A stretch of 64,000 nt of DNA, from the IMG/VR virus record IMGVR_UViG_3300043418_000072, positions 290,099 through 354,098 of that record, one strand, 5' to 3'. Position numbers and translations under genes: made by a program. The notes beneath the pieces were generated by a model. It searched no databases, was not told where the DNA came from, and worked only from the letters and a program-made list of their open reading frames with translations. Shown here one piece after another: positions 1 through 62,810 of the stretch (its first letter is position 1; every line of letters starts with the position of its first letter).

Positions 1-314
1 CCCGGATACTTGGCAAGTATGTTATCCTGCGGTCCAGGTTTTTGCGTTATCGGTATTGGGTTGCAGAGAAAAAATACTTTACTAACATCAAAACTAGTTG
101 CCCGTGTGCCACTATTATTAGGCCATATTTCGTTGTCTTTCCACGCCGAAACATTTTGTATATTCCATTGCGTGGACTTTGTTTTGTGTACGTTGATTGT
201 TCCGTTTTCGAAGCAACACTTATATTGGCCGCTGAGTAGCAACAGGTACAAACAAAAGAATCCGCCACTACCTCCAAAATAACAAATAGTTACATCAGCT
301 GGCTTCTGCGTCAT
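1..314 (-). CDS. Hypothetical protein, 5' part (runs off window): MTQKPADVTICYFGGSGGFFCLYLLLLSGQYKCCFENG...
   Basis: Hand translation; ATG at 314 overlaps the upstream gene's TGA (ATGA); frame open to window edge, so absent from ORF track. Confidence 0.65.
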   Translation of the reverse strand, partial: MTQKPADVTICYFGGSGGFFCLYLLLLSGQYKCCFENGTINVHKTKSTQWNIQNVSAWKDNEIWPNNSGTRATSFDVSKVFFLCNPIPITQKPGPQDNILAKYP

Positions 315-1207
315 CGGGCAACCCCAGTTAACTCTGATACAATAGTTTGTACTGTCTTAATTGAACTAATGTAATCAATTGCTTTGCCCGCAAATACATG
401 CCCAGCAGTCGGACTCTTGATTCCCAGTTCTAGTCCCATTGTGTGATTACCATCTACGTCAGGCTCTGAAGAAAATACCAAAGCATTTTGATGAGCTTCG
501 CCAATATTCTTTACTTGATCAAATGACGATTCGATCATTTTCAGTTTGGTTTCAGTTGAAATAGATGATTCTTCTGATACTGCAAATATTGTTCCCAACC
601 CAACTGCACATGCTCCTGCATCCAAGCAGTCTTGTATATCTTGTGCCGACGTTACGCCGCCCGATGCGATAATATTTAGATTGCTGTGGGTCGATTTTAG
701 TTGCTTGATTCTATCCACTAGACTAATTGACACGTCTGCAACACGGGACGCAGCATCTGGTCCCTTTATATCAATTGCATCAATGTAATTAACTAAGTCC
801 CCAATAGGGCGTGTGCTCAATACTTTGTAGATTATCTTAATTTTATATTTTCTAAAAAGTTTAATGATATTTGTTAAACGAATGTTTGTTAAGTCTACAT
901 CATCAAACAATTCCAAGTAATTTGGATGGTATTTTAGAATAGCTTCAACCAGCGTTGTATCTTTTAATAAAAAATCCGATCGCAGTGCAAGAATAAAATC
1001 ACGAGACCCAGATTGCTCAGTGAATTCTTTCATCTCCGACACAATCTTTGTTACGTCAAGAGTCAATCGAGACTCAATATAATTGTGTACTACCAGGCTT
1101 GGCAGACAGCCTGCGTTGTGAACCGCGAGAGCCAACTTAACGTCGGACACTCTATTCATTGGCGCACAAATAATAGGATGTGTACAAGATAAAAAATTGT
1201 TTTGCAT
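311..1207 (-). CDS. Nitronate monooxygenase / 2-nitropropane dioxygenase-like FMN oxidoreductase
   Basis: PIICAPMN at N-terminus; IIASGGV...GACAVGLGTIF...ESS; HVFAGKA near C-terminus. Confidence 0.8.
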   Translation of the reverse strand: MQNNFLSCTHPIICAPMNRVSDVKLALAVHNAGCLPSLVVHNYIESRLTLDVTKIVSEMKEFTEQSGSRDFILALRSDFLLKDTTLVEAILKYHPNYLELFDDVDLTNIRLTNIIKLFRKYKIKIIYKVLSTRPIGDLVNYIDAIDIKGPDAASRVADVSISLVDRIKQLKSTHSNLNIIASGGVTSAQDIQDCLDAGACAVGLGTIFAVSEESSISTETKLKMIESSFDQVKNIGEAHQNALVFSSEPDVDGNHTMGLELGIKSPTAGHVFAGKAIDYISSIKTVQTIVSELTGVAR

Positions 1208-1222
1208 CAGATACTTATCTTA

Positions 1223-1296
1223 TGGTGCTCCCACTAAGAATCGAACTTAGGACTGCGCTATACCACAGCGCCGATATACCATTTACCTATGAGAGC
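1223..1296 (-). tRNA. tRNA-Thr(GGT)
   Basis: Cloverleaf, stem GCGCT/AGCGC, loop GTGGTAT (unusual G32), TTCGATT, CCA. Confidence 0.75.
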
Positions 1297-1302
1297 AGGT
1301 GT

Positions 1303-2511
1303 TTATTTTGTTTGTATAGAGAATACGTCTGTAAACGATTCGCCCCTAATAACATCATACTTCTTTGTATAGTCAAAGAATGCAGATGGCATATTTGGCG
1401 TTAATGTTGATAACGCTTGTTTCACATTTAGTAGCTCAGTAACCAATACTACATAATTTGGTGCAGTTAGTATTTCAACTGCTTTGTTAATTTGCTCAAT
1501 TGCCCGGCCCCGCAGTTGATTAGGCAAGTTGTTAAAGTTCATGCCTGGCGGAGAAGTTACGTTATAGCACTTCACGCCAATGGTGTTGTTTTCGTTATAT
1601 AGCCGCATCAGGAACGTTGCTGTTTCTGCAAAATCCATTAAACTATATGCAGATATTGCTGTTGTAACTTCCATCTTAAACGGCGATTGAAGTTGGTTAA
1701 GTCTAAGTACGTTACTTTCAACTTTTGGCCAATCTGTTCCGCTGCGAATATATTCTGCCGATTTACCCACTGCGTCAATGCTCATTACCATCTGCACTGT
1801 TTTAAATTTACTAAGACGGTCAACAAACAATGGGTTATACACACTGCAATTGGTGTATAGCTCTAGGTTAATTTCTTTGTTGAATCCGTTATCTATTAGA
1901 TAATCAAGGTAGTCGTAATATTCTTTTATTAAGAATGGTTCCCCACCCGTTAAGCATACTTTCCATACTGAGGCCAAGAAGGCAGGGTCCTTAAGACCCT
2001 CAATAGAATTGCTTTCAATTTTTGTAATAGGTATCACACTGTACTCAATGTGGCTACCTTCTTTATCTGGTTTAATGTTGTGCTGAATCTTTTCTGCTGC
2101 AAAGCTAGAGCTAGATGTTTCATCGCACATTCTGCATTTCATGTTACACAGATTACTAAATCTAAGTTCAATGCGGCCCGGTACTGTCGGTGTGTCGGCT
2201 GTAAATTTATTTGCAAACCATTGATCTTCGTACTCGGGTTCTGGGCCTACATTATAGTAATTCCAAATTGCGCCGCGTGTGCTTTTTAGCCCCATGTCTT
2301 CTTTTGTCTTGCAGCCGCCACATGCAGTTGGGGCAGTGCCACTCAGCATATCTGTCTTCATCTGCTTGAGCCAATCACTGTTGATATACTCAGCGGGTGT
2401 CATGCCAGACTCTAAGTTCTTGATGTAATGACACGGACTAGGAGAGTTGGCGTGATAGTACATCATTGTCCACGGTGCTGGGCAAAAGAACTTCTCAGAA
2501 AACTTTGCCAT
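1303..2511 (-). CDS. Radical SAM protein with N-terminal twitch/SPASM-like Cys motifs
   Basis: CNMKCRMC (CxxxCxxC), LTGGEP, YTN, MSIDA. Confidence 0.85.
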   Translation of the reverse strand: MAKFSEKFFCPAPWTMMYYHANSPSPCHYIKNLESGMTPAEYINSDWLKQMKTDMLSGTAPTACGGCKTKEDMGLKSTRGAIWNYYNVGPEPEYEDQWFANKFTADTPTVPGRIELRFSNLCNMKCRMCDETSSSSFAAEKIQHNIKPDKEGSHIEYSVIPITKIESNSIEGLKDPAFLASVWKVCLTGGEPFLIKEYYDYLDYLIDNGFNKEINLELYTNCSVYNPLFVDRLSKFKTVQMVMSIDAVGKSAEYIRSGTDWPKVESNVLRLNQLQSPFKMEVTTAISAYSLMDFAETATFLMRLYNENNTIGVKCYNVTSPPGMNFNNLPNQLRGRAIEQINKAVEILTAPNYVVLVTELLNVKQALSTLTPNMPSAFFDYTKKYDVIRGESFTDVFSIQTK

Positions 2512-3227: not shown

Positions 3228-3358
3228 TACCATATCAAAGTACGCTACGGAATCGAACCGCAGTCGTCAACCTTTCCCTCCAGGGCAATTGATACAATTA
3301 TAGCTTCCACAGGAGCGACCTGATTCACTATAATGCACTAGCGTACTTTGATATGGTA
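3228..3358 (-). ncRNA. Long-stem RNA with tRNA T-arm
   Basis: Perfect 20-bp inverted repeat taccatatcaaagtacgcta / tagcgtactttgatatggta; GCGG-TTCGATT-CCGT inside. Confidence 0.6.
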
Positions 3359-4280: not shown

Positions 4281-4605
4281 ATTCATTTTTCTCTTTTAAT
4301 CGCATAGCTTCTAATCTTGCTTTCAAGAATAGTTCAACTACATCTTTATTTAACTTAGTAAATCCTGTCTTGATTAGAAAGAACAATTCGTCTTTTTCTG
4401 ACTCAAGCCATACCACGTGAGCATCACCTGTATTGCCCACTGCCCCAAGTCCTTCGGGGTTGCTGAATCTCTGTGCCGCGTTACAAATGAACGCAAACTT
4501 TACCCCAAAGTCCCTTGATAGTACTTCTGGACCAGTGGCCTCACCTTGGGCAATCCGGTACACATAGTTGTACTCGTACGGAACGTCAACGTAGACTTTG
4601 TGCAT
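4264..4605 (-). CDS. Hypothetical protein
   Basis: 113-aa ORF packed between phosphatase and RF gene, overlapping both. Confidence 0.65.
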   Translation of the reverse strand: MHKVYVDVPYEYNYVYRIAQGEATGPEVLSRDFGVKFAFICNAAQRFSNPEGLGAVGNTGDAHVVWLESEKDELFFLIKTGFTKLNKDVVELFLKARLEAMRLKEKNEYETCN

Positions 4606-5108
4606 TAGATATCACCTTCGTGGCTTGGGGGTAAAATGATACCACCTGCGCTGTATTGGTATGGTTGACCATTGATTGTTGGCTCTTCGTTCTCATCGTA
4701 TGTCCATCCCAGATGCTTCATCATGCGATGCTTGACTAGCAAGTTAGGAGCACGAAATGCTTCAGTGTCATCAAACCCAAGCATGACCCCAACTTCACAA
4801 ACTGCACCACTGCGGCAAACACCGGCATGGCAGTGAACAATCACGTTCATGCGATTCTCTAGTGCATGTTGCAACAAACGAACTAGCTCCGCAGCTTGCT
4901 CGTGACTGCAACGCATTTCTTCTTCAAGAACGTAGTCCTTTTCCTCTACATCGAGGAACTCAAATTGATGAACTTCTCTAAACTTGTAAAGGGGGGTAGG
5001 ACACTCGCTCCCGCAGTCAACAATTTGAATCAACATAGCGTTATCACCGGGGTTTATGTGAAACCCTTTAGTGACATCGCTACGTGCTACGTTTTGGATC
5101 CAGGGCAT
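4605..5108 (-). CDS. Dual-specificity / tyrosine phosphatase family protein
   Basis: HCHAGVCRS = CX5R loop; start reassigned to MPWIQ (AAGGA RBS). Confidence 0.8.
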   Translation of the reverse strand: MPWIQNVARSDVTKGFHINPGDNAMLIQIVDCGSECPTPLYKFREVHQFEFLDVEEKDYVLEEEMRCSHEQAAELVRLLQHALENRMNVIVHCHAGVCRSGAVCEVGVMLGFDDTEAFRAPNLLVKHRMMKHLGWTYDENEEPTINGQPYQYSAGGIILPPSHEGDI

Positions 5109-5280
5109 TTTGTTTCCTTGTGTTAAATACAGTATGAGCAAACCCAATCCTGGATTCGATGAATTACTTAAACTCGGCAACGGAACTTATTCCAATGCTA
5201 AGAGCTTCTCTTGTGTTAAACATTTTACACGAGATTATCCTGAAAAGCAAGATTTGCCTTTTGTACAGGATATGAAATTC

Positions 5281-5314
5281 TGGCAGAGGATAGTGGAATC
5301 GAACCACTAATGAC
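5281..5314 (-). pseudogene. tRNA 3' half fragment (T-arm + acceptor strand + GCCA)
   Basis: GTCATTAGTGGTTCGATTCCACTATCCTCTGCCA abutting the CCA of tRNA-Gln. Confidence 0.7.
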
Positions 5315-5396: not shown

Positions 5397-5798
5397 TTAT
5401 CTATATTTTTCCAAGTTGTTTAATGTCCATCTACCGACATTTTTACCTTTATTTCTACCAGCAAATGTATCTGTTTGACTATGGCAGTTAGGACATAATA
5501 ATCTTAGATTATCTAGTTTATTATTACTTGAGTCACCGTTTATGTGGTCCACTTGACACTTAATTGGACGACTGGCCCATTCGGATATTCCGCAAGTGGA
5601 ACACTTGTTACCAAATAAACTCATTAACACACTGTATATTGTTGGCCGATTTGTTATTTGCCCATCAACAATAAGTTTTTTATTTTCTGCTAATACCATA
5701 CTAGATTTATGCTGACTCTGGCATGCGTGATTACAATAAACTCTCTCTTGTGTTGAATATCTTGGTATGATTTCTTTTTTACAATTTAAGCATAACAT
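5397..5798 (-). mobile_element. HNH homing endonuclease inserted in tRNA array
   Basis: CSTCG...QVDHINGDSSNNKLDNLRLLCPNCHSQT. Confidence 0.88.
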
Positions 5799-8380: not shown

Positions 8381-8466
8381 TGGTGGGGATAGTTAGATTC
8401 GAACCAACTCATCCAGTGGAAACAGATTTACAGTCTGCCGCGCCTCTCCAACTGCGCCGTATCCCC
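8381..8466 (-). tRNA. tRNA-Tyr(GTA)
   Basis: Loop CTGTAAA, long variable arm, CCA. Confidence 0.95.
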
Positions 8467-8478
8467 ATTATTTCTTTA

Positions 8479-8658
8479 TGCTGTTAAGGCTGATATCTAA
8501 TAAACCCTACTAGGAATCGAACCTAGGCCCCCGACGGATTATGCCGGTGTGCGTCCACTACACTATAGAGACTCCCTCCTCTTTCGCTCGGCAAAGCTAC
8601 ACGAATTGAGGTTAGATTTCAGACTGCTTTCAGATTGCCGTCATCAGCCTTAACAACA
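8479..8658 (-). ncRNA. Long-stem RNA enclosing a CCA-less tRNA-like cloverleaf
   Basis: 16-nt terminal inverted repeat; D-like GTG-TAGTGGAC-GCAC; CTAGG-TTCGATT-CCTAG. Confidence 0.55.
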
Positions 8659-8664
8659 CAAACT

Positions 8665-8734
8665 TGGCGCCCCTAACAGGAATCGAACCTGTCTACGTTC
8701 GGCTTCAAATCCGACTCGCAACTCAGTCCGGGGC
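8665..8734 (-). tRNA. Atypical 70-nt tRNA (vestigial D-arm, 8-nt anticodon loop ATTTGAAG; identity unclear)
   Basis: GCCCC/GGGGC acceptor, ACAGG-TTCGATT-CCTGT, G73, CCA. Confidence 0.55.
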
Positions 8735-8744
8735 ATAAACTTAT

Positions 8745-8889
8745 GTACATCAGCGGGATTCGAACCCGCACACATCACCCGAACATACCGCATTGTTAGC
8801 GGCTTACACATCCTAGGCCACTGGCCTTTACTGTCGATGTCCTACTTAGTGTTATGGGTAATGCTCTCCCAATTGATAGTATGACGCAC
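8745..8889 (-). ncRNA. tRNA-like RNA with about 70-nt branched insert replacing the anticodon loop
   Basis: Acceptor GTGCGTCA/TGATGTAC, D-arm, CATTACC/GGTGATG, GCGGG-TTCGAAT-CCCGC; no encoded CCA. Confidence 0.65.
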
Positions 8890-8963
8890 GAAATAGAAAC
8901 ACATTGCTAGTTTCGCCTTGAGCCGACTTTAAAATCAGATGCGGTTTAAGCAATGTGAAAACT

Positions 8964-9103
8964 TGGTGTAGTAATTGGGACTTGAACCCAACTAGTTATC
9001 TGTTTTTACAAACGGGTGATATCACTTCCCATCGCCATATGCCCCTCGGGTTTGCAATCCTGCTACGCACACAGTCAAATAACCTGTCAACCTAACTTAC
9101 CAC
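8964..9103 (-). ncRNA. Miniature tmRNA-like RNA (140 nt)
   Basis: GTGGTAA/TTACTAC with G3:U70, A73, CCA; stemless D-loop GTTAGGTTGACA; helix GGTTATTTG/CAGATAACT; TTGGG-TTCAAGT-CCCAA. Confidence 0.65.
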
Positions 9104-9110
9104 AAAAACT

Positions 9111-9185
9111 TGGAAGAGCTACGGGGAATCGAACCCCGCTTGCCTGGATGAAAACCAGATGTCCTAACCGATAGACGATAGCTCC
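9111..9185 (-). tRNA. tRNA-Glu(TTC)
   Basis: Loop TTTTCAT, CCA. Confidence 0.93.
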
Positions 9186-9186
9186 A

Positions 9187-9269
9187 CTATATGTAAACAC
9201 AATACTCATCCGCTTTACGCTAATATCACTTTAGGCGATTTGATTGTTCGGCATTGTGTTTGCATATAG
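9187..9269 (-). ncRNA. Long-stem RNA candidate
   Basis: 17-nt inverted repeat ctatatgtaaacacaat / attgtgtttgcatatag. Confidence 0.5.
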
Positions 9270-9369
9270 AGCCCTGTAACTTGTACAGGGATATATGACA
9301 GTATCTTTTTAAAGACTGTTAGCATTACAGTACGATCACTGCGCTGCGTTGTTTGTTTAACATGTATGT

Positions 9370-9464: not shown

Positions 9465-9493
9465 ATTATAGCACCCATTTCATTAAGTGTCAA
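9465..9493 (-). promoter_or_regulatory. Sigma70-type promoter
   Basis: TTGACA-N17-TATAAT. Confidence 0.85.
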
Positions 9494-9661: not shown

Positions 9662-9918
9662 TGGCTTCGTTAGCAGGACTCGAACCTGCGACCCGGGGCT
9701 TAAATCGCGTATGCTGGGTGCCCCGTGAGTTTCCAAAAGTTACCCTCACATCCCCTCAATGCCTTATCTCACTTTTCACACATTTCAACCTGTCCCGCAC
9801 TTCCCGGGCTCACAGTGTTTGGTTTTAAAGCCTACGCGATTGTTATCTACTTTGTGCTACTAGATGTATTATCTCATCTACTCAATGCTGCTCTACCTTC
9901 TCTCTACTCTATAACGAA
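9662..9918 (-). ncRNA. 257-nt tRNA-like RNA with large insert and probable pseudoknot
   Basis: Acceptor TTCGTTA/TAACGAA, G73, CCA; GCAGG-TTCGAGT-CCTGC; CGGGGC/GCCCCG; AATCGCGTA/TACGCGATT. Confidence 0.65.
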
Positions 9919-61811: not shown

Positions 61812-62726
61812 TTAGGCGTTAGCAATTTGAACAGTAGTGTTCAATGTAGCTGCATCAAATGTCCAACGTACCATTGTACCGTCATCAAACTCATGCCCGG
61901 CTGTACCGTATTGTGTCAACAATGCGTTGTGGCTAGTTAGCTTGGTAACATAGTAAGTCTTGCCGCTGCTGTCTGTAGCAGTAATACTCATTTCTCCTAC
62001 TGCTGCTGGTGTAGCTGCAACTAAAGAACATACTGCTGTACCTTCGCTAGTTGTGACGCGATAGCGGTGGCTACCTTTTTGTGCGTTAATATCAGCAACT
62101 AAGCTGTTACTAGTTACGTAAGCGTAAGCAAGGATAGCATTTTCTTGGTTTGTTGCAGAACCAACATCACCACTGTCAGTTGTTAATGTAATAGTGTTTA
62201 CTGTAATACCACCACGGTTTGTGTACGACACTGTTGGTGCTGCTGTGTAGCCAGAACCTTTGTTAGTAACTGTCACTGATAATGCACCGTATGTTAATAC
62301 TGGAACTGCACCAGTACCTGTACCACCAGAAACGCCAGTTACCGCGCTCAATGCAGTAAACGAGCCTGCGGTTGTAACGCTGTTAACGGTAACAACTGCA
62401 CCACCAGCATCGGAAGTTACGTTAAGAACTGCTGAACCGCCTGCTGTAGTGACTGTTAAGTCAAATGTTTGTGCGTTACCATATCCTGTACCACCTGAAA
62501 TTGTGGCGCTAATTACTTTAGACACAATAACACCGGTTGCTGTTACGCCGCCTGGTAGTTGTGGTGCCGAAAATGTAATTGTTGGTAATGTAGTAGTATA
62601 CGAACCAGCAACCGATACTGCTGCACTTGCTAGGCCTTCACCGCCGATGCCATCATCTGCTGTGTAACCACCGTTGGTACCGACGTTACGGTTACCGAAA
62701 AATCTTTTTGCTAAAGGACGTCCCAT
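61812..62726 (-). CDS. Virion structural protein
   Basis: MGRPLAKRFFG; G/T/A-rich. Confidence 0.65.
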   Translation of the reverse strand: MGRPLAKRFFGNRNVGTNGGYTADDGIGGEGLASAAVSVAGSYTTTLPTITFSAPQLPGGVTATGVIVSKVISATISGGTGYGNAQTFDLTVTTAGGSAVLNVTSDAGGAVVTVNSVTTAGSFTALSAVTGVSGGTGTGAVPVLTYGALSVTVTNKGSGYTAAPTVSYTNRGGITVNTITLTTDSGDVGSATNQENAILAYAYVTSNSLVADINAQKGSHRYRVTTSEGTAVCSLVAATPAAVGEMSITATDSSGKTYYVTKLTSHNALLTQYGTAGHEFDDGTMVRWTFDAATLNTTVQIANA

Positions 62727-62810
62727 TTTGTTTTCTCCTTAAAATATGAAAATAGCGTTCTAGGCCTACGCTGATGGTACAGCATAAACTCTCAATTAAG
62801 AGCGAACATA

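What the first reader, a model, noticed from the sequence alone, without database searches (positions are those of the whole stretch)
8745..8889. tRNA body with the anticodon loop replaced by a branched 70-nt domain
Seen: acceptor with a possible G-1:C73 pair, normal D-arm and T-arm, a 7-bp CATTACC/GGTGATG stem, then ACATC/GATGT, AGGCC/GGCCT and CCGC/GCGG helices; no CCA is encoded. The layout resembles the adjacent mini-tmRNA-like RNA. It is too short for a group I intron. Inference: an anticodon-less tRNA mimic (decoy for synthetases, tRNases or uncharged-tRNA sensors) or a protein-spliced intron.
Basis: partly seen in the sequence, partly recalled or inferred. Interest (0 to 1): 0.65.

Follow-up and report, generated by a model that had tools for sequence, protein, structure and literature searches.

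The report
Anticodon-less tRNA look-alike in phage
A giant freshwater phage carries, inside its long row of tRNA genes, a gene for a complete tRNA body whose anticodon loop is replaced by a conserved 79-base branched RNA domain, so it cannot decode; it resembles the unexplained tRNA-like stable RNAs known from phage T4.

Summary
On the minus strand at 8889-8745 lies a full tRNA cloverleaf: a 7-bp acceptor plus G-1:C73, a D-arm and a canonical T-arm. Its anticodon stem is extended to 8 bp and opens into a 4-bp helix and a three-way junction with two hairpins. There is no anticodon loop and no encoded CCA, whereas 36 of the 37 ARAGORN-called tRNAs in the window encode CCA. The window is the end of a 354-kb jumbo-phage record. 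The only homologues found are an identical copy and a 92 % copy in a sister phage. Four of the 12 differences are compensatory pair changes (chance about 1e-4 or less), and a 54-nt core of the insert is invariant. Metatranscriptome contigs from two studies cover the insert and both junctions, and none skips it. An intron is not supported. The insert is too short for group I. There is no BHB motif, and no splice position restores U33. ARAGORN's intron mode is blank, and the phage has no EndA or RtcB. It is also not a tmRNA or a Y RNA. My best reading is an unspliced, non-decoding tRNA-like stable RNA processed out of the tRNA array. The closest analogue is T4 species 1 RNA. Its function is untested. 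G-1:C73, the HisRS identity pair, is a lead.

The parts
8745..8889 (-). Whole tRNA-like RNA gene (145 nt, from G-1 to C73)
   Evidence: The homologues L020:10814-10958 (100 %) and L003:7365-7508 (91.7 %) come.
8882..8889 (-). G-1 (8889) and the 5' acceptor strand UGCGUCA (8888-8882)
   Evidence: It pairs 7 of 7 with 8752-8746. G-1 pairs with C73. Among the window's tRNAs only tRNA-His shares G-1 plus C73.
8864..8879 (-). D-arm: CUAU / CAAUUGGG / AGAG
   Evidence: ARAGORN draws it as the D-arm once the insert is replaced in silico by a 7-nt loop. It is invariant in L003.
8856..8863 (-). 5' strand of the 8-bp extended anticodon stem, CAUUACCC
   Evidence: It pairs with 8780-8773. The innermost pair C:G becomes U:A in L003.
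8779..8857 (-). 79-nt insert in place of the 7-nt anticodon loop: 2x1 internal loop, 4-bp helix AACA/UGUU, three-way junction
   Evidence: It is not repeated elsewhere in the 354-kb genome. Rfam finds nothing even at E <= 10.
8800..8853 (-). 54-nt core of the insert, identical in the window and L003
   Evidence: The chance of no change is about 0.009 at the element's own divergence of 8.3 %.
8841..8849 (-). Single-stranded junction segment CUAAGUAGG
   Evidence: It is unpaired in the MFE and centroid structures and invariant in L003.
8808..8840 (-). Hairpin a: ACAUC/GAUGU, an asymmetric internal loop (GACAGUAA / AG), then AGGCC-AGU-GGCCU
   Evidence: A diverged relative in an RNA run has AGG-UUUGUAA-CCU at the tip (run X3, record 10 and its loose end).
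8787..8803 (-). Hairpin b: GCCGC-UAACAAU-GCGGU
   Evidence: In L003 it reads GCCGU-AAGUAU-ACGGU. The closing pair changed on both sides, and the loop differs in sequence and length, so the loop is not an anticodon.
8773..8780 (-). 3' strand of the extended anticodon stem, GGGUGAUG
8753..8769 (-). T-arm GCGGG-UUCGAAU-CCCGC
   Evidence: Two compensatory pair changes in L003 give GUAGG/CCUAC.
8745..8752 (-). 3' acceptor strand UGAUGUA (8752-8746) and C73 (8745); AUAAG follows, not CCA
   Evidence: In contrast, 36 of the 37 ARAGORN-called tRNAs in the window encode CCA.
9465..9493 (-). Candidate promoter of the transcription unit: TTGACA, 17-nt spacer, TATAAT with a TG extension (12 of 12)
   Evidence: This is a consensus match only. 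It lies about 575 nt upstream, before tRNA-Glu, the 137-nt RNA and the element.

Best explanation
It is a gene for a non-decoding tRNA-like stable RNA, not a tRNA and not an intron-bearing tRNA.

Proposed mechanism:
- It is transcribed with its neighbours from the tRNA array of a 354-kb freshwater jumbo phage.
- Its canonical acceptor, D-arm and T-arm make it a substrate for the host's tRNA-end processing: RNase P at the 5' side and 3' trimming. They also give it the L-shaped, nuclease-resistant tRNA body.
- The anticodon loop is replaced by a conserved 79-nt three-way-junction domain that stays in the mature RNA. The molecule can therefore neither read a codon nor be cut by anticodon-loop nucleases.
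- The tRNA body acts as a processing and stability handle, and possibly as a binding surface for proteins that recognise tRNA bodies. The invariant 54-nt core of the insert is the specific effector surface.

Shown:
- the anatomy;
- the conservation with compensatory changes;
- the absence of an anticodon and of an encoded CCA;
- the presence of the unspliced sequence in RNA libraries.

Inferred:
- the processing route;
- the stability;
- what the insert or the body binds.

A sub-hypothesis is that, after CCA addition, G-1:C73 makes it a ligand or substrate of host HisRS.
For: - The body is a complete cloverleaf.
- There is no anticodon loop, and ARAGORN finds nothing in normal or intron mode.
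- The Rfam tRNA model does not reach it.
- It lies co-oriented inside an array of 37 tRNAs in the window, 50 ARAGORN genes in the genome, downstream of a 12-of-12 sigma-70 consensus.
- The L003 homologue is 91.7 % identical. It has 3 compensatory pairs as aligned and a fourth after re-placing the indel: two in the T-stem, one in the extended stem and one in hairpin b. The chance is p about 9e-5 for 3 or more and about 5e-6 for 4 or more.
- A 54-nt insert core is invariant, while the upstream spacer is only about 82 % identical.
- RNA-library contigs from two studies (runs X3; X4 and X17) cover the insert and both insert/body junctions. In X4 and X17 their depth is 4-5 times that of the adjacent spacer. 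No joint removes the insert.
- There is a precedent: T4 rnaC, a 139-nt stable RNA in the T4 tRNA cluster with a canonical T-arm and long internal hairpins. Its role is still unknown (PMC3014915).
- Other CCA-less, anticodon-less tRNA-likes occur in related arrays: the 98-99-nt family at L009:4856-4954, L047, L065 and L072, and one at L008:16375-16470.
Against: - Only two distinct full sequences, plus one partial variant, are known, so the covariation rests on few events.
- The RNA evidence comes from assembled contigs. They cannot show ends, strand or level, and DNA carry-over cannot be excluded.
- A rare spliced form could have been dropped by the assembler.
- L003 has an uncompensated change (G.U to U.U) in the acceptor stem, and its MFE z-score is only -0.94.
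- No partner protein or target RNA was identified. The phage genome holds no antisense match longer than 12 nt.
- The narrow distribution (one phage lineage) would also fit a young, nearly neutral element.
Confidence: 0.55

Rival explanations
1. It is a tRNA mimic that acts through its body as a decoy or substrate. After CCA addition by the host enzyme, G-1:C73 makes it a HisRS ligand, charged or merely bound. Alternatively, it soaks up a host defence enzyme that recognises the acceptor/T-arm part of tRNAs. Without an anticodon it stays invisible to the ribosome and to anticodon nucleases. The insert then only serves to remove the anticodon loop.
For: - Among the 37 tRNAs of the window, only tRNA-His has G-1 together with C73; position -1 is U in 29 of the 37. 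The pair is kept in L003.
- From established knowledge, HisRS and AlaRS are the classic synthetases that charge acceptor minihelices without an anticodon. The neighbouring anticodon-less RNA (9103-8964) carries the AlaRS identity pair G3.U70 with ACCA, conserved in three phages.
- Unrelated anticodon-less, CCA-less tRNA-likes recur in related arrays. This suggests that the body itself is what matters.
Against: - No CCA is encoded, although 36 of the 37 array tRNAs encode it.
- The phage has no CCA-adding enzyme and no HisRS.
- In the 98-99-nt family the -1:73 pair is U:A in three of four members, so His identity is not general.
- The insert core is invariant, which is more conservation than a mere spacer would need.
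- No phage decoy of this kind is documented in the papers I searched.
Confidence: 0.2
2. It is a tRNA gene interrupted by an intron that is removed, either by proteins (endonuclease plus ligase) or by self-splicing, to give a normal tRNA.
For: - The insertion sits exactly where tRNA introns sit, in the anticodon loop.
- The rest of the gene is a normal tRNA body.
- Contigs could miss a short spliced product.
Against: - The 79-nt insert is far below group I size, and Rfam gives no intron or ribozyme hit even at E <= 10.
- The geometry is a 2x1 internal loop, a 4-bp helix and a multiloop. It is not a bulge-helix-bulge motif.
- Every possible splice position leaves C or G at position 33, never U (read from the sequence).
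- ARAGORN's intron mode is blank.
- The phage has no EndA or RtcB.
- The nucleotides flanking the would-be loop covary as a pair.
- No joint skips the insert in three RNA runs.
- The gene has no CCA, unlike 36 of the 37 tRNAs in the array.
Confidence: 0.05
3. It is a decaying tRNA pseudogene that took up a piece of foreign or duplicated DNA in its anticodon loop. It is carried along and co-transcribed without a function of its own.
For: - It is found in only one narrow phage lineage.
- This part of the array is rearranged between the window and L003. The 137-nt neighbour has moved, the 67-nt neighbour is replaced, and the 254-nt element is absent.
- L003 has one unpaired change in the acceptor.
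- The array also holds other tRNA debris, such as an orphan 3' half at 5283-5314.
Against: - Four compensatory pair changes among 12 differences (p about 1e-4 or less).
- An invariant 54-nt core next to an 82 %-identical spacer.
- The insert is not a repeat of anything in the genome.
- In RNA libraries its depth is above that of the spacers.
Confidence: 0.15
4. It is a miniature tmRNA-like molecule used in trans-translation.
For: - The topology is a tRNA-like body with a large internal domain.
- It lies next to an RNA with G3.U70 and ACCA.
- Rfam's tmRNA model touches the T-loop (15.8 bits).
Against: - The third acceptor pair is C3:G70, not G3.U70; the discriminator is C73; and there is no CCA.
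- It has a full D-stem and anticodon stem, which tmRNAs lack.
- No reading frame with a conserved stop is shared with L003.
- The tmRNA score of 15.8 bits is far below the gathering score of 47.
- The phage already has a permuted tmRNA at 179583-179981 and has no SmpB.
Confidence: 0.02

Closest known systems
Phage T4 species 1 RNA (rnaC) and species 2 RNA (rnaD), the small stable RNAs of the T4 tRNA cluster
   Same: - They are encoded inside a phage tRNA gene cluster, co-oriented with the tRNAs.
- rnaC (139 nt) has a canonical T-arm (CCGGG-UUCGAAU-CCCGG), a terminal closing stem and long internal hairpins. It has no anticodon and no encoded CCA.
- Their function is unknown (PMC3014915).
   Different: - There is no detectable sequence homology. 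My model of the element scores rnaC at 17.7 bits, the same level as ordinary T4 tRNAs.
- rnaC has no D-arm and only an imperfect acceptor. The present RNA keeps the whole cloverleaf, and only the anticodon loop is replaced.
Bacterial Y RNAs with tRNA-like domains (YrlA; D. radiodurans Yrn1)
   Same: - They are non-coding RNAs that mimic the tRNA D-arm, T-arm and acceptor and are handled by tRNA enzymes. Some are encoded in phages (PMC4201824).
- Yrn1 has the same arm order: terminal stem, D-like arm, stem-loop, T-arm.
   Different: - Y RNAs are defined by a Ro60/Rsr-binding helix and lie next to rsr. This phage has no TROVE protein.
- The YrlA motif GNCGAAN0-1G is absent.
- In YrlA the ends lie in the anticodon-equivalent stem, so it is permuted relative to this RNA.
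tmRNA
   Same: A tRNA-like body whose anticodon region is replaced by a large structured domain. Phages of this group also encode tmRNAs.
   Different: tmRNA has G3.U70, A73-CCA, no D-stem, pseudoknots and a tag reading frame. None of these is present here.
tRNA-like processing modules (mascRNA of MALAT1; the tRNA-like/miRNA chimeras of murid herpesvirus 68) and the engineered 'tRNA scaffold' for expressing RNA inserts in the anticodon arm. The comparison rests on my own knowledge and is not tested here, except that Rfam's mascRNA model has no hit on the element.
   Same: A tRNA-shaped body is used for RNase P/Z processing and stability of an RNA that does not decode. The engineered scaffold has exactly this layout, with the insert replacing the anticodon loop.
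   Different: Those are eukaryotic, eukaryote-viral or man-made. No natural phage example with a defined cargo is known to me.
98-99-nt anticodon-less tRNA-likes in related phage arrays (L009:4856-4954, L047:7114-7211, L065, L072), found here
   Same: - A full tRNA body, an 8-bp acceptor including the -1:73 pair, and no CCA.
- The anticodon arm is replaced by a long, covarying hairpin with a variable tip.
- They sit in tRNA arrays.
- The 5' end UGCGUYA-UA is shared. L072 even has G-1, UGCGUCA and C73.
   Different: - The insert is a simple bulged hairpin of about 40 nt, not a branched domain.
- The model of that family scores the element at only 20 bits, below many ordinary tRNAs, so homology is not shown.
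Archaeal-type intron-containing tRNAs (bulge-helix-bulge introns)
   Same: An insertion of tens of nucleotides in the anticodon loop of an otherwise normal tRNA gene.
   Different: There is no BHB motif, no restorable anticodon loop, no splicing enzymes in the phage and no spliced form seen.

Membership tests
Canonical decoding tRNA (Rfam RF00005) | Acceptor, D-arm and T-arm of a cloverleaf | tested here: met
Canonical decoding tRNA (Rfam RF00005) | 7-nt anticodon loop with U33 and an anticodon | tested here: not met
   A 79-nt structured insert takes its place. ARAGORN finds nothing, and the Rfam tRNA model gives no hit even at E <= 10.
Canonical decoding tRNA (Rfam RF00005) | 3' CCA, encoded in this array's tRNAs | tested here: not met
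   The tail is CAUAAG, while 36 of the 37 array tRNAs encode CCA. Post-transcriptional addition was not testable.
tRNA with a group I intron | Intron with a group I catalytic core (about 200 nt or more; Rfam Intron_gpI) | tested here: not met
   The insert is 79 nt, and Rfam gives no hit at E <= 1 or E <= 10.
tRNA with a protein-spliced (BHB) intron | Bulge-helix-bulge motif: two 3-nt bulges on opposite strands around a 4-bp helix | tested here: not met
   The geometry is a 2x1 internal loop, a 4-bp helix and then a multiloop.
tRNA with a protein-spliced (BHB) intron | Excision restores a canonical anticodon loop | tested here: not met
   Every splice position leaves C33 or G33 (sequence). ARAGORN's intron mode is blank.
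tRNA with a protein-spliced (BHB) intron | Splicing endonuclease and ligase available | tested here: not met
   The phage has no tRNA_int_endo or RtcB. The host is unknown.
tRNA with a protein-spliced (BHB) intron | Spliced RNA exists | tested here: inconclusive
   No joint skips the insert in three RNA runs, but these are contigs, which drop rare or short forms.
tmRNA | G3.U70 with A73-CCA (alanine identity) | tested here: not met
   The element has C3:G70, C73 and no CCA.
tmRNA | Tag reading frame with a conserved stop; match to the tmRNA model | tested here: not met
   The frames are not conserved between the window and L003. The Rfam tmRNA score is 15.8 bits against a gathering score of 47, and only on the T-loop.
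Y RNA (YrlA/Yrn1) | Ro60/Rsr (TROVE) gene nearby and a Ro-binding helix motif | tested here: not met
   The 354-kb genome has no TROVE domain. The motif GNCGAAN0-1G (PMC4201824) is absent from the sequence.
Phage tRNA-cluster stable RNAs (T4 rnaC type) | Encoded in a phage tRNA cluster, with tRNA-like T-arm and closing stem, non-decoding | tested here: met
Phage tRNA-cluster stable RNAs (T4 rnaC type) | Accumulates as a discrete stable RNA processed from the tRNA precursor | tested here: inconclusive
   It is present in metatranscriptome contigs at 4-5 times the depth of the spacer, but the ends and the size cannot be seen.
Phage tRNA-cluster stable RNAs (T4 rnaC type) | Sequence or structure homology to T4 rnaC | tested here: not met
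   My model of the element scores rnaC at 17.7 bits, the same as ordinary T4 tRNAs.
98-99-nt anticodon-less tRNA-like family (L009 type) | Scores above ordinary tRNAs with the family's covariance model | tested here: not met
   The element scores 20 bits, while ordinary tRNAs reach 41 bits and family members 115-121 bits.
HisRS substrate (tRNA-His identity) | G-1:C73 at the top of the acceptor stem | tested here: met
   conserved in L003.
HisRS substrate (tRNA-His identity) | 3' CCA end and actual histidylation | not testable with these tools
   CCA is not encoded, and the phage has no CCA-adding enzyme or HisRS. This needs biochemistry.

The most novel reading that the evidence does not exclude
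The phage makes a set of aminoacylatable but anticodon-less tRNA bodies. This one carries the HisRS identity pair G-1:C73, and its neighbour carries the AlaRS pair G3.U70. These are the two synthetases that ignore the anticodon. The RNAs would be charged, or would bind the synthetase, outside translation. Each would present a different structured domain, as a non-ribosomal aminoacyl carrier, a synthetase-directed regulator, or a decoy for defence enzymes that attack tRNA acceptor ends. That would make it a natural 'tRNA scaffold' with a cargo.
Probability: 0.15. Interest if true: 0.8.

Novelty: new variant of a known kind. Interest (0 to 1): 0.5.

Why it matters
Phage tRNA clusters have been known for fifty years to encode tRNA-like stable RNAs, such as T4 RNA C and D, whose roles are still unknown. 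This element is an unusually clean case. It has a complete cloverleaf in which only the anticodon loop is exchanged for a conserved branched domain, and its acceptor carries the histidine identity pair.

Related jumbo-phage arrays hold several unrelated anticodon-less, CCA-less tRNA look-alikes. Together they suggest that non-decoding tRNA bodies are a recurrent phage invention. They are not annotation noise.

Possible uses include tRNA-processing handles for small RNAs and decoys in the conflict over host tRNA-targeting defences. The element also shows that standard tRNA finders and Rfam miss this class entirely.

Tried and rejected
- **Cultured phages:** blastn of the 546-nt gap against 50,697 phage records gave no match.
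- **My model of the element (R1):** it found only the three known copies in 16 related loci and in the whole genome.
- **Pattern scans of IMG/VR:** five scans returned the same two records. Two of them were keyed on the acceptor and also picked up the unrelated 98-99-nt family.
- **Metagenome contigs:** two exact-pattern scans found nothing. The diverged variant seen in RNA run X3 was not in IMG/VR either.
- **Bacterial genomes:** the pattern gave 7 hits, fewer than chance predicts, and none matched the model.
- **Rfam:** at permissive E-values on the insert alone and on the whole array it found no riboswitch, ribozyme, intron or Y RNA.
- **Parent tRNA:** none could be found. The best identity to 551 tRNAs of the fetched loci is about 60 %, which is background.
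- **Mobile repeat:** the insert occurs only once in the 354-kb genome.
- **Antisense target:** the phage genome holds only 10-12-mers complementary to the insert, at chance level.
- **Partner enzymes in the phage:** EndA, RtcB, CCA-adding enzyme, TROVE/Ro, HisRS, class IIa synthetase core, FemAB, L/F-transferase and SmpB are all absent.
- **Homology to the 98-99-nt family:** this was suggested by the shared UGCGUYA-UA 5' end, but the family's covariance model did not support it.
- **K-turn and sarcin-ricin motifs:** I checked the internal loop of hairpin a by eye, and the consensus does not fit.
- **Literature:** searches found no description of this element.

Full report
**Context**

The window is the last 64 kb of a 354,098-bp IMG/VR virus record that CheckV rates complete. 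Its first 12.6 kb carry, on the minus strand, 37 tRNA genes called by ARAGORN. The whole genome has 50 such genes, including a permuted tmRNA and an amber-suppressor tRNA. The nearest cultured relatives are only distant jumbo phages: 25 % protein identity to Ralstonia phage RsoM2USA. Runs holding the sequence are freshwater metagenomes.

**The observation**

- G-1, then the acceptor UGCGUCA pairing 7 of 7 with UGAUGUA, and C73 opposite G-1.
- U8 and A9, then a D-arm CUAU/CAAUUGGG/AGAG.
- An 8-bp stem CAUUACCC/GGGUGAUG. It includes the five canonical anticodon-stem pairs and the 26:44 pair.
- A 2x1 internal loop and a 4-bp helix AACA/UGUU.
- A three-way junction with the single-stranded segment CUAAGUAGG.
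- Hairpin a: ACAUC/GAUGU, an internal loop, then AGGCC-AGU-GGCCU.
- Hairpin b: GCCGC-UAACAAU-GCGGU.
- A short variable region UGU, the T-arm GCGGG-UUCGAAU-CCCGC, and the tail CAUAAG.

The free-energy minimum reproduces these helices except the canonical D-stem, for which it draws a 3-bp alternative (z = -2.04). The insert between the canonical stem strands is 79 nt. When I replaced it in silico by a 7-nt loop, ARAGORN called a clean cloverleaf with an 8-bp acceptor. So the body is a genuine tRNA body.

ARAGORN, in normal and in intron mode, does not detect the natural sequence. Neither does the Rfam tRNA model.

**Homologues and selection**

A neighbouring protein (DUF7448) led to 18 related loci in IMG/VR. 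The element occurs in only two records: one identical (L020) and one 91.7 % identical (L003, a 320-kb contig).

Of the 12 differences:
- two pairs are compensatory changes in the T-stem;
- one pair turns the innermost C:G of the extended stem into U:A;
- one pair turns the closing C:G of hairpin b into U:A, while its loop changes in sequence and loses a base.

Random placement of 12 substitutions gives three or more such pairs with p about 9e-5, and four or more with p about 5e-6. Positions 37-90, the core of the insert, are identical. The spacer just upstream is only about 82 % identical, and the arrays as a whole are 92-97 % identical. One change in L003 (G.U to U.U in the acceptor) is uncompensated.

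A third, more diverged variant appears in an RNA run. Its hairpin-a tip is AGG-UUUGUAA-CCU (record 10 and its loose end). I could not retrieve it from any collection. The changing loop of hairpin b shows that it is not a displaced anticodon.

**Expression**

Twenty public runs from 17 studies hold at least part of the stretch, six of them RNA libraries. I laid three metatranscriptomes and one DNA run on 8400-9300.
- RNA-run contigs cover the insert and both junctions: X4 8700-8797 and 8823-8893; X17 8781-8853 and 8824-8957; X3 8800-9069.
- In X4 and X17 the depth over the insert is 4-5 times that of the adjacent spacer.
- In those runs the assemblies break into tRNA-sized pieces of very unequal depth. 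The DNA run gives one flat contig.
- No joint removes the insert. The joints seen (8957 to 9105, and 8890 to 8959) lie outside it, and at least the first, which skips the 137-nt neighbour, matches a genomic arrangement also seen in DNA.

These are contigs. They cannot show ends or strand, cannot exclude DNA carry-over, and can miss a rare spliced form.

A 12-of-12 sigma-70 consensus lies at 9493-9465 on the same strand, upstream of tRNA-Glu, the 137-nt RNA and the element.

**What it is not**

*An intron.*
- At 79 nt it is far below group I size, and Rfam finds no intron or ribozyme even at E <= 10.
- The geometry next to the stem is not a bulge-helix-bulge motif.
- Every conceivable splice position leaves C or G at position 33, never U.
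- The flanking nucleotides covary as a pair.
- The phage encodes neither a splicing endonuclease nor RtcB.

*A tmRNA.*
- It has C3:G70, C73 and no CCA.
- It has full D and anticodon stems.
- It shares no conserved reading frame with L003.
- It scores 15.8 bits against the gathering score of 47.
- The phage already has a permuted tmRNA.

*A Y RNA.* The genome has no TROVE/Ro protein, and the YrlA motif described in PMC4201824 is absent.

*A mobile repeat.* The insert is unique in the genome.

No parent tRNA could be identified among 551 tRNAs of the fetched loci.

**What it most likely is**

The closest known things are the small stable RNAs of the T4 tRNA cluster. T4 rnaC (139 nt) has a canonical T-arm, a closing stem and long internal hairpins. 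Its role, and that of rnaD, is still unknown (PMC3014915). There is no sequence homology, and the present RNA is far more tRNA-like.

The array around it is rich in further non-canonical tRNA-like genes.
- A 137-nt RNA with G3.U70 and ACCA lies at 9103-8964 and is conserved in three phages.
- A 67-nt RNA lies at 8734-8665. In L003 a 155-nt G3.U70 element takes its place.
- A 254-nt RNA lies at 9918-9662. It is conserved in more distant relatives but absent from L003.
- A 110-nt CCA-less RNA lies at 3347-3238.

More distant relatives carry a 98-99-nt family with a complete body, an 8-bp acceptor and no CCA. A covarying hairpin with a variable tip replaces its anticodon arm. That family shares the 5' end UGCGUYA-UA with the element, but its covariance model scores the element below ordinary tRNAs. 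I therefore treat it as analogous, not homologous.

I conclude that the element is an unspliced, non-decoding tRNA-like stable RNA.

*Shown:* the fold, its maintenance by compensatory change, the lack of an anticodon and of CCA, and the presence of the insert in RNA libraries.

*Inferred:*
- The tRNA body recruits RNase P and 3' trimming to cut the RNA out of the array transcript and stabilises it.
- The conserved insert core is the specific working surface.

A second reading gives the main role to the body, as a decoy or as a HisRS ligand.
- For it: G-1 with C73 is otherwise found only in tRNA-His among the 37 tRNAs. The neighbour carries the identity pair of AlaRS, the other synthetase that ignores the anticodon.
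- Against it: CCA is missing, and the phage has no CCA-adding enzyme or HisRS.

A pseudogene cannot be fully excluded, given that only two full sequences are known.

**Verdict**

- The 'mimic' interpretation is structurally supported.
- The 'protein-spliced intron' is not supported.
- Novelty: a new variant of a known but unexplained kind, the phage tRNA-cluster tRNA-like RNAs.
- Interest: 0.5.

Noticed in passing
window 8964-9103 (-): A 137-nt tRNA-like RNA plus CCA, without a D-arm. Its acceptor is G1:C72, U2:A71, G3.U70, followed by A73-CCA: the alanine (tmRNA-type) identity. It is conserved in L003:7738-7876 and L005:7617-7754, with compensatory changes in the T-stem. The phage has no SmpB.
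   Followed up: partly
window 8665-8734 (-); L003:7517-7672: A 67-nt tRNA-like RNA with GCCA lies directly downstream of the element. In the sister phage a different, 155-nt tRNA-like RNA with G3.U70 and ACCA takes its place.
   Followed up: partly
window 9662-9918 (-): A 254-nt tRNA-like closure (UUCGUUA/UAACGAA, canonical T-arm, GCCA). It is conserved in the 79 % relatives (L004:7170, L005:6496) but is cleanly absent from the 99 % relative L003. Rfam gives no hit, and the folding z-score is about 0.
   Followed up: partly
window 3238-3347 (-): A 110-nt CCA-less tRNA-like RNA with a perfect 7-bp closure and long hairpins in place of the D and anticodon arms (z = -3.17). It is also present at L003:13959-14068.
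   Followed up: no
window 8544-8640: In RNA run X3, a 120-nt contig at depth about 1500 ends in adaptor sequence at 8640. This points to an abundant small RNA covering the spacer and the 5' half of the odd 'tRNA-Ile(aat)' at 8501-8573. That gene itself lacks CCA and has C at position 37.
   Followed up: no
window 9465-9493 (-): A perfect sigma-70 consensus with an extended -10 (TTGACA, 17-nt spacer, TATAAT; 12 of 12) lies inside the tRNA array. It suggests a bacterial host whose RNA polymerase uses sigma-70-type promoters, and a strong internal promoter.
   Followed up: no
L009:4856-4954, L047:7114-7211, L065:1373-1471 (-), L072:3786-3883 (-); also L008:16375-16470: A conserved family of 98-99-nt anticodon-less, CCA-less tRNA-like genes in the tRNA arrays of other large phages. 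The Rfam tRNA model scores one at 43 bits with a 40-nt insertion. The distal hairpin covaries and the tip loop varies. L008 holds a further, different GAAA-capped example.
   Followed up: partly
G000:C1:179583-179981 and 174391-174465: The genome outside the window holds a permuted (two-piece) tmRNA with tag ANDSQFLMVA and an amber-suppressor tRNA (anticodon CUA). Relatives L009 and L017 also carry tRNA(CUA).
   Followed up: no
window 62724-62803 (-): An Rfam 'freshwater-2' RNA motif scores above its gathering score (55.9 bits against 49.9).
   Followed up: no
window 311-2511, 4605-5180 and 5397-5798 (-): Protein genes lie among the tRNA genes. They are an FMN TIM-barrel protein (NMO/IMPDH/DHO_dh-like), a radical SAM protein, a dual-specificity phosphatase-like protein and an HNH endonuclease. 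The first two could be tRNA-modifying enzymes; this was not examined.
   Followed up: no
window 5283-5314 (-): An orphan tRNA 3' half (T-arm, acceptor strand, GCCA) lies directly downstream of tRNA-Gln, with no 5' partner.
   Followed up: no
L004, L005, L006, L008, L017, L047, L072 (for example L004:4913-5004): Unusually long (91-95 nt) 'tRNA-Ile(UAU)' genes recur in the arrays of the related phages.
   Followed up: no
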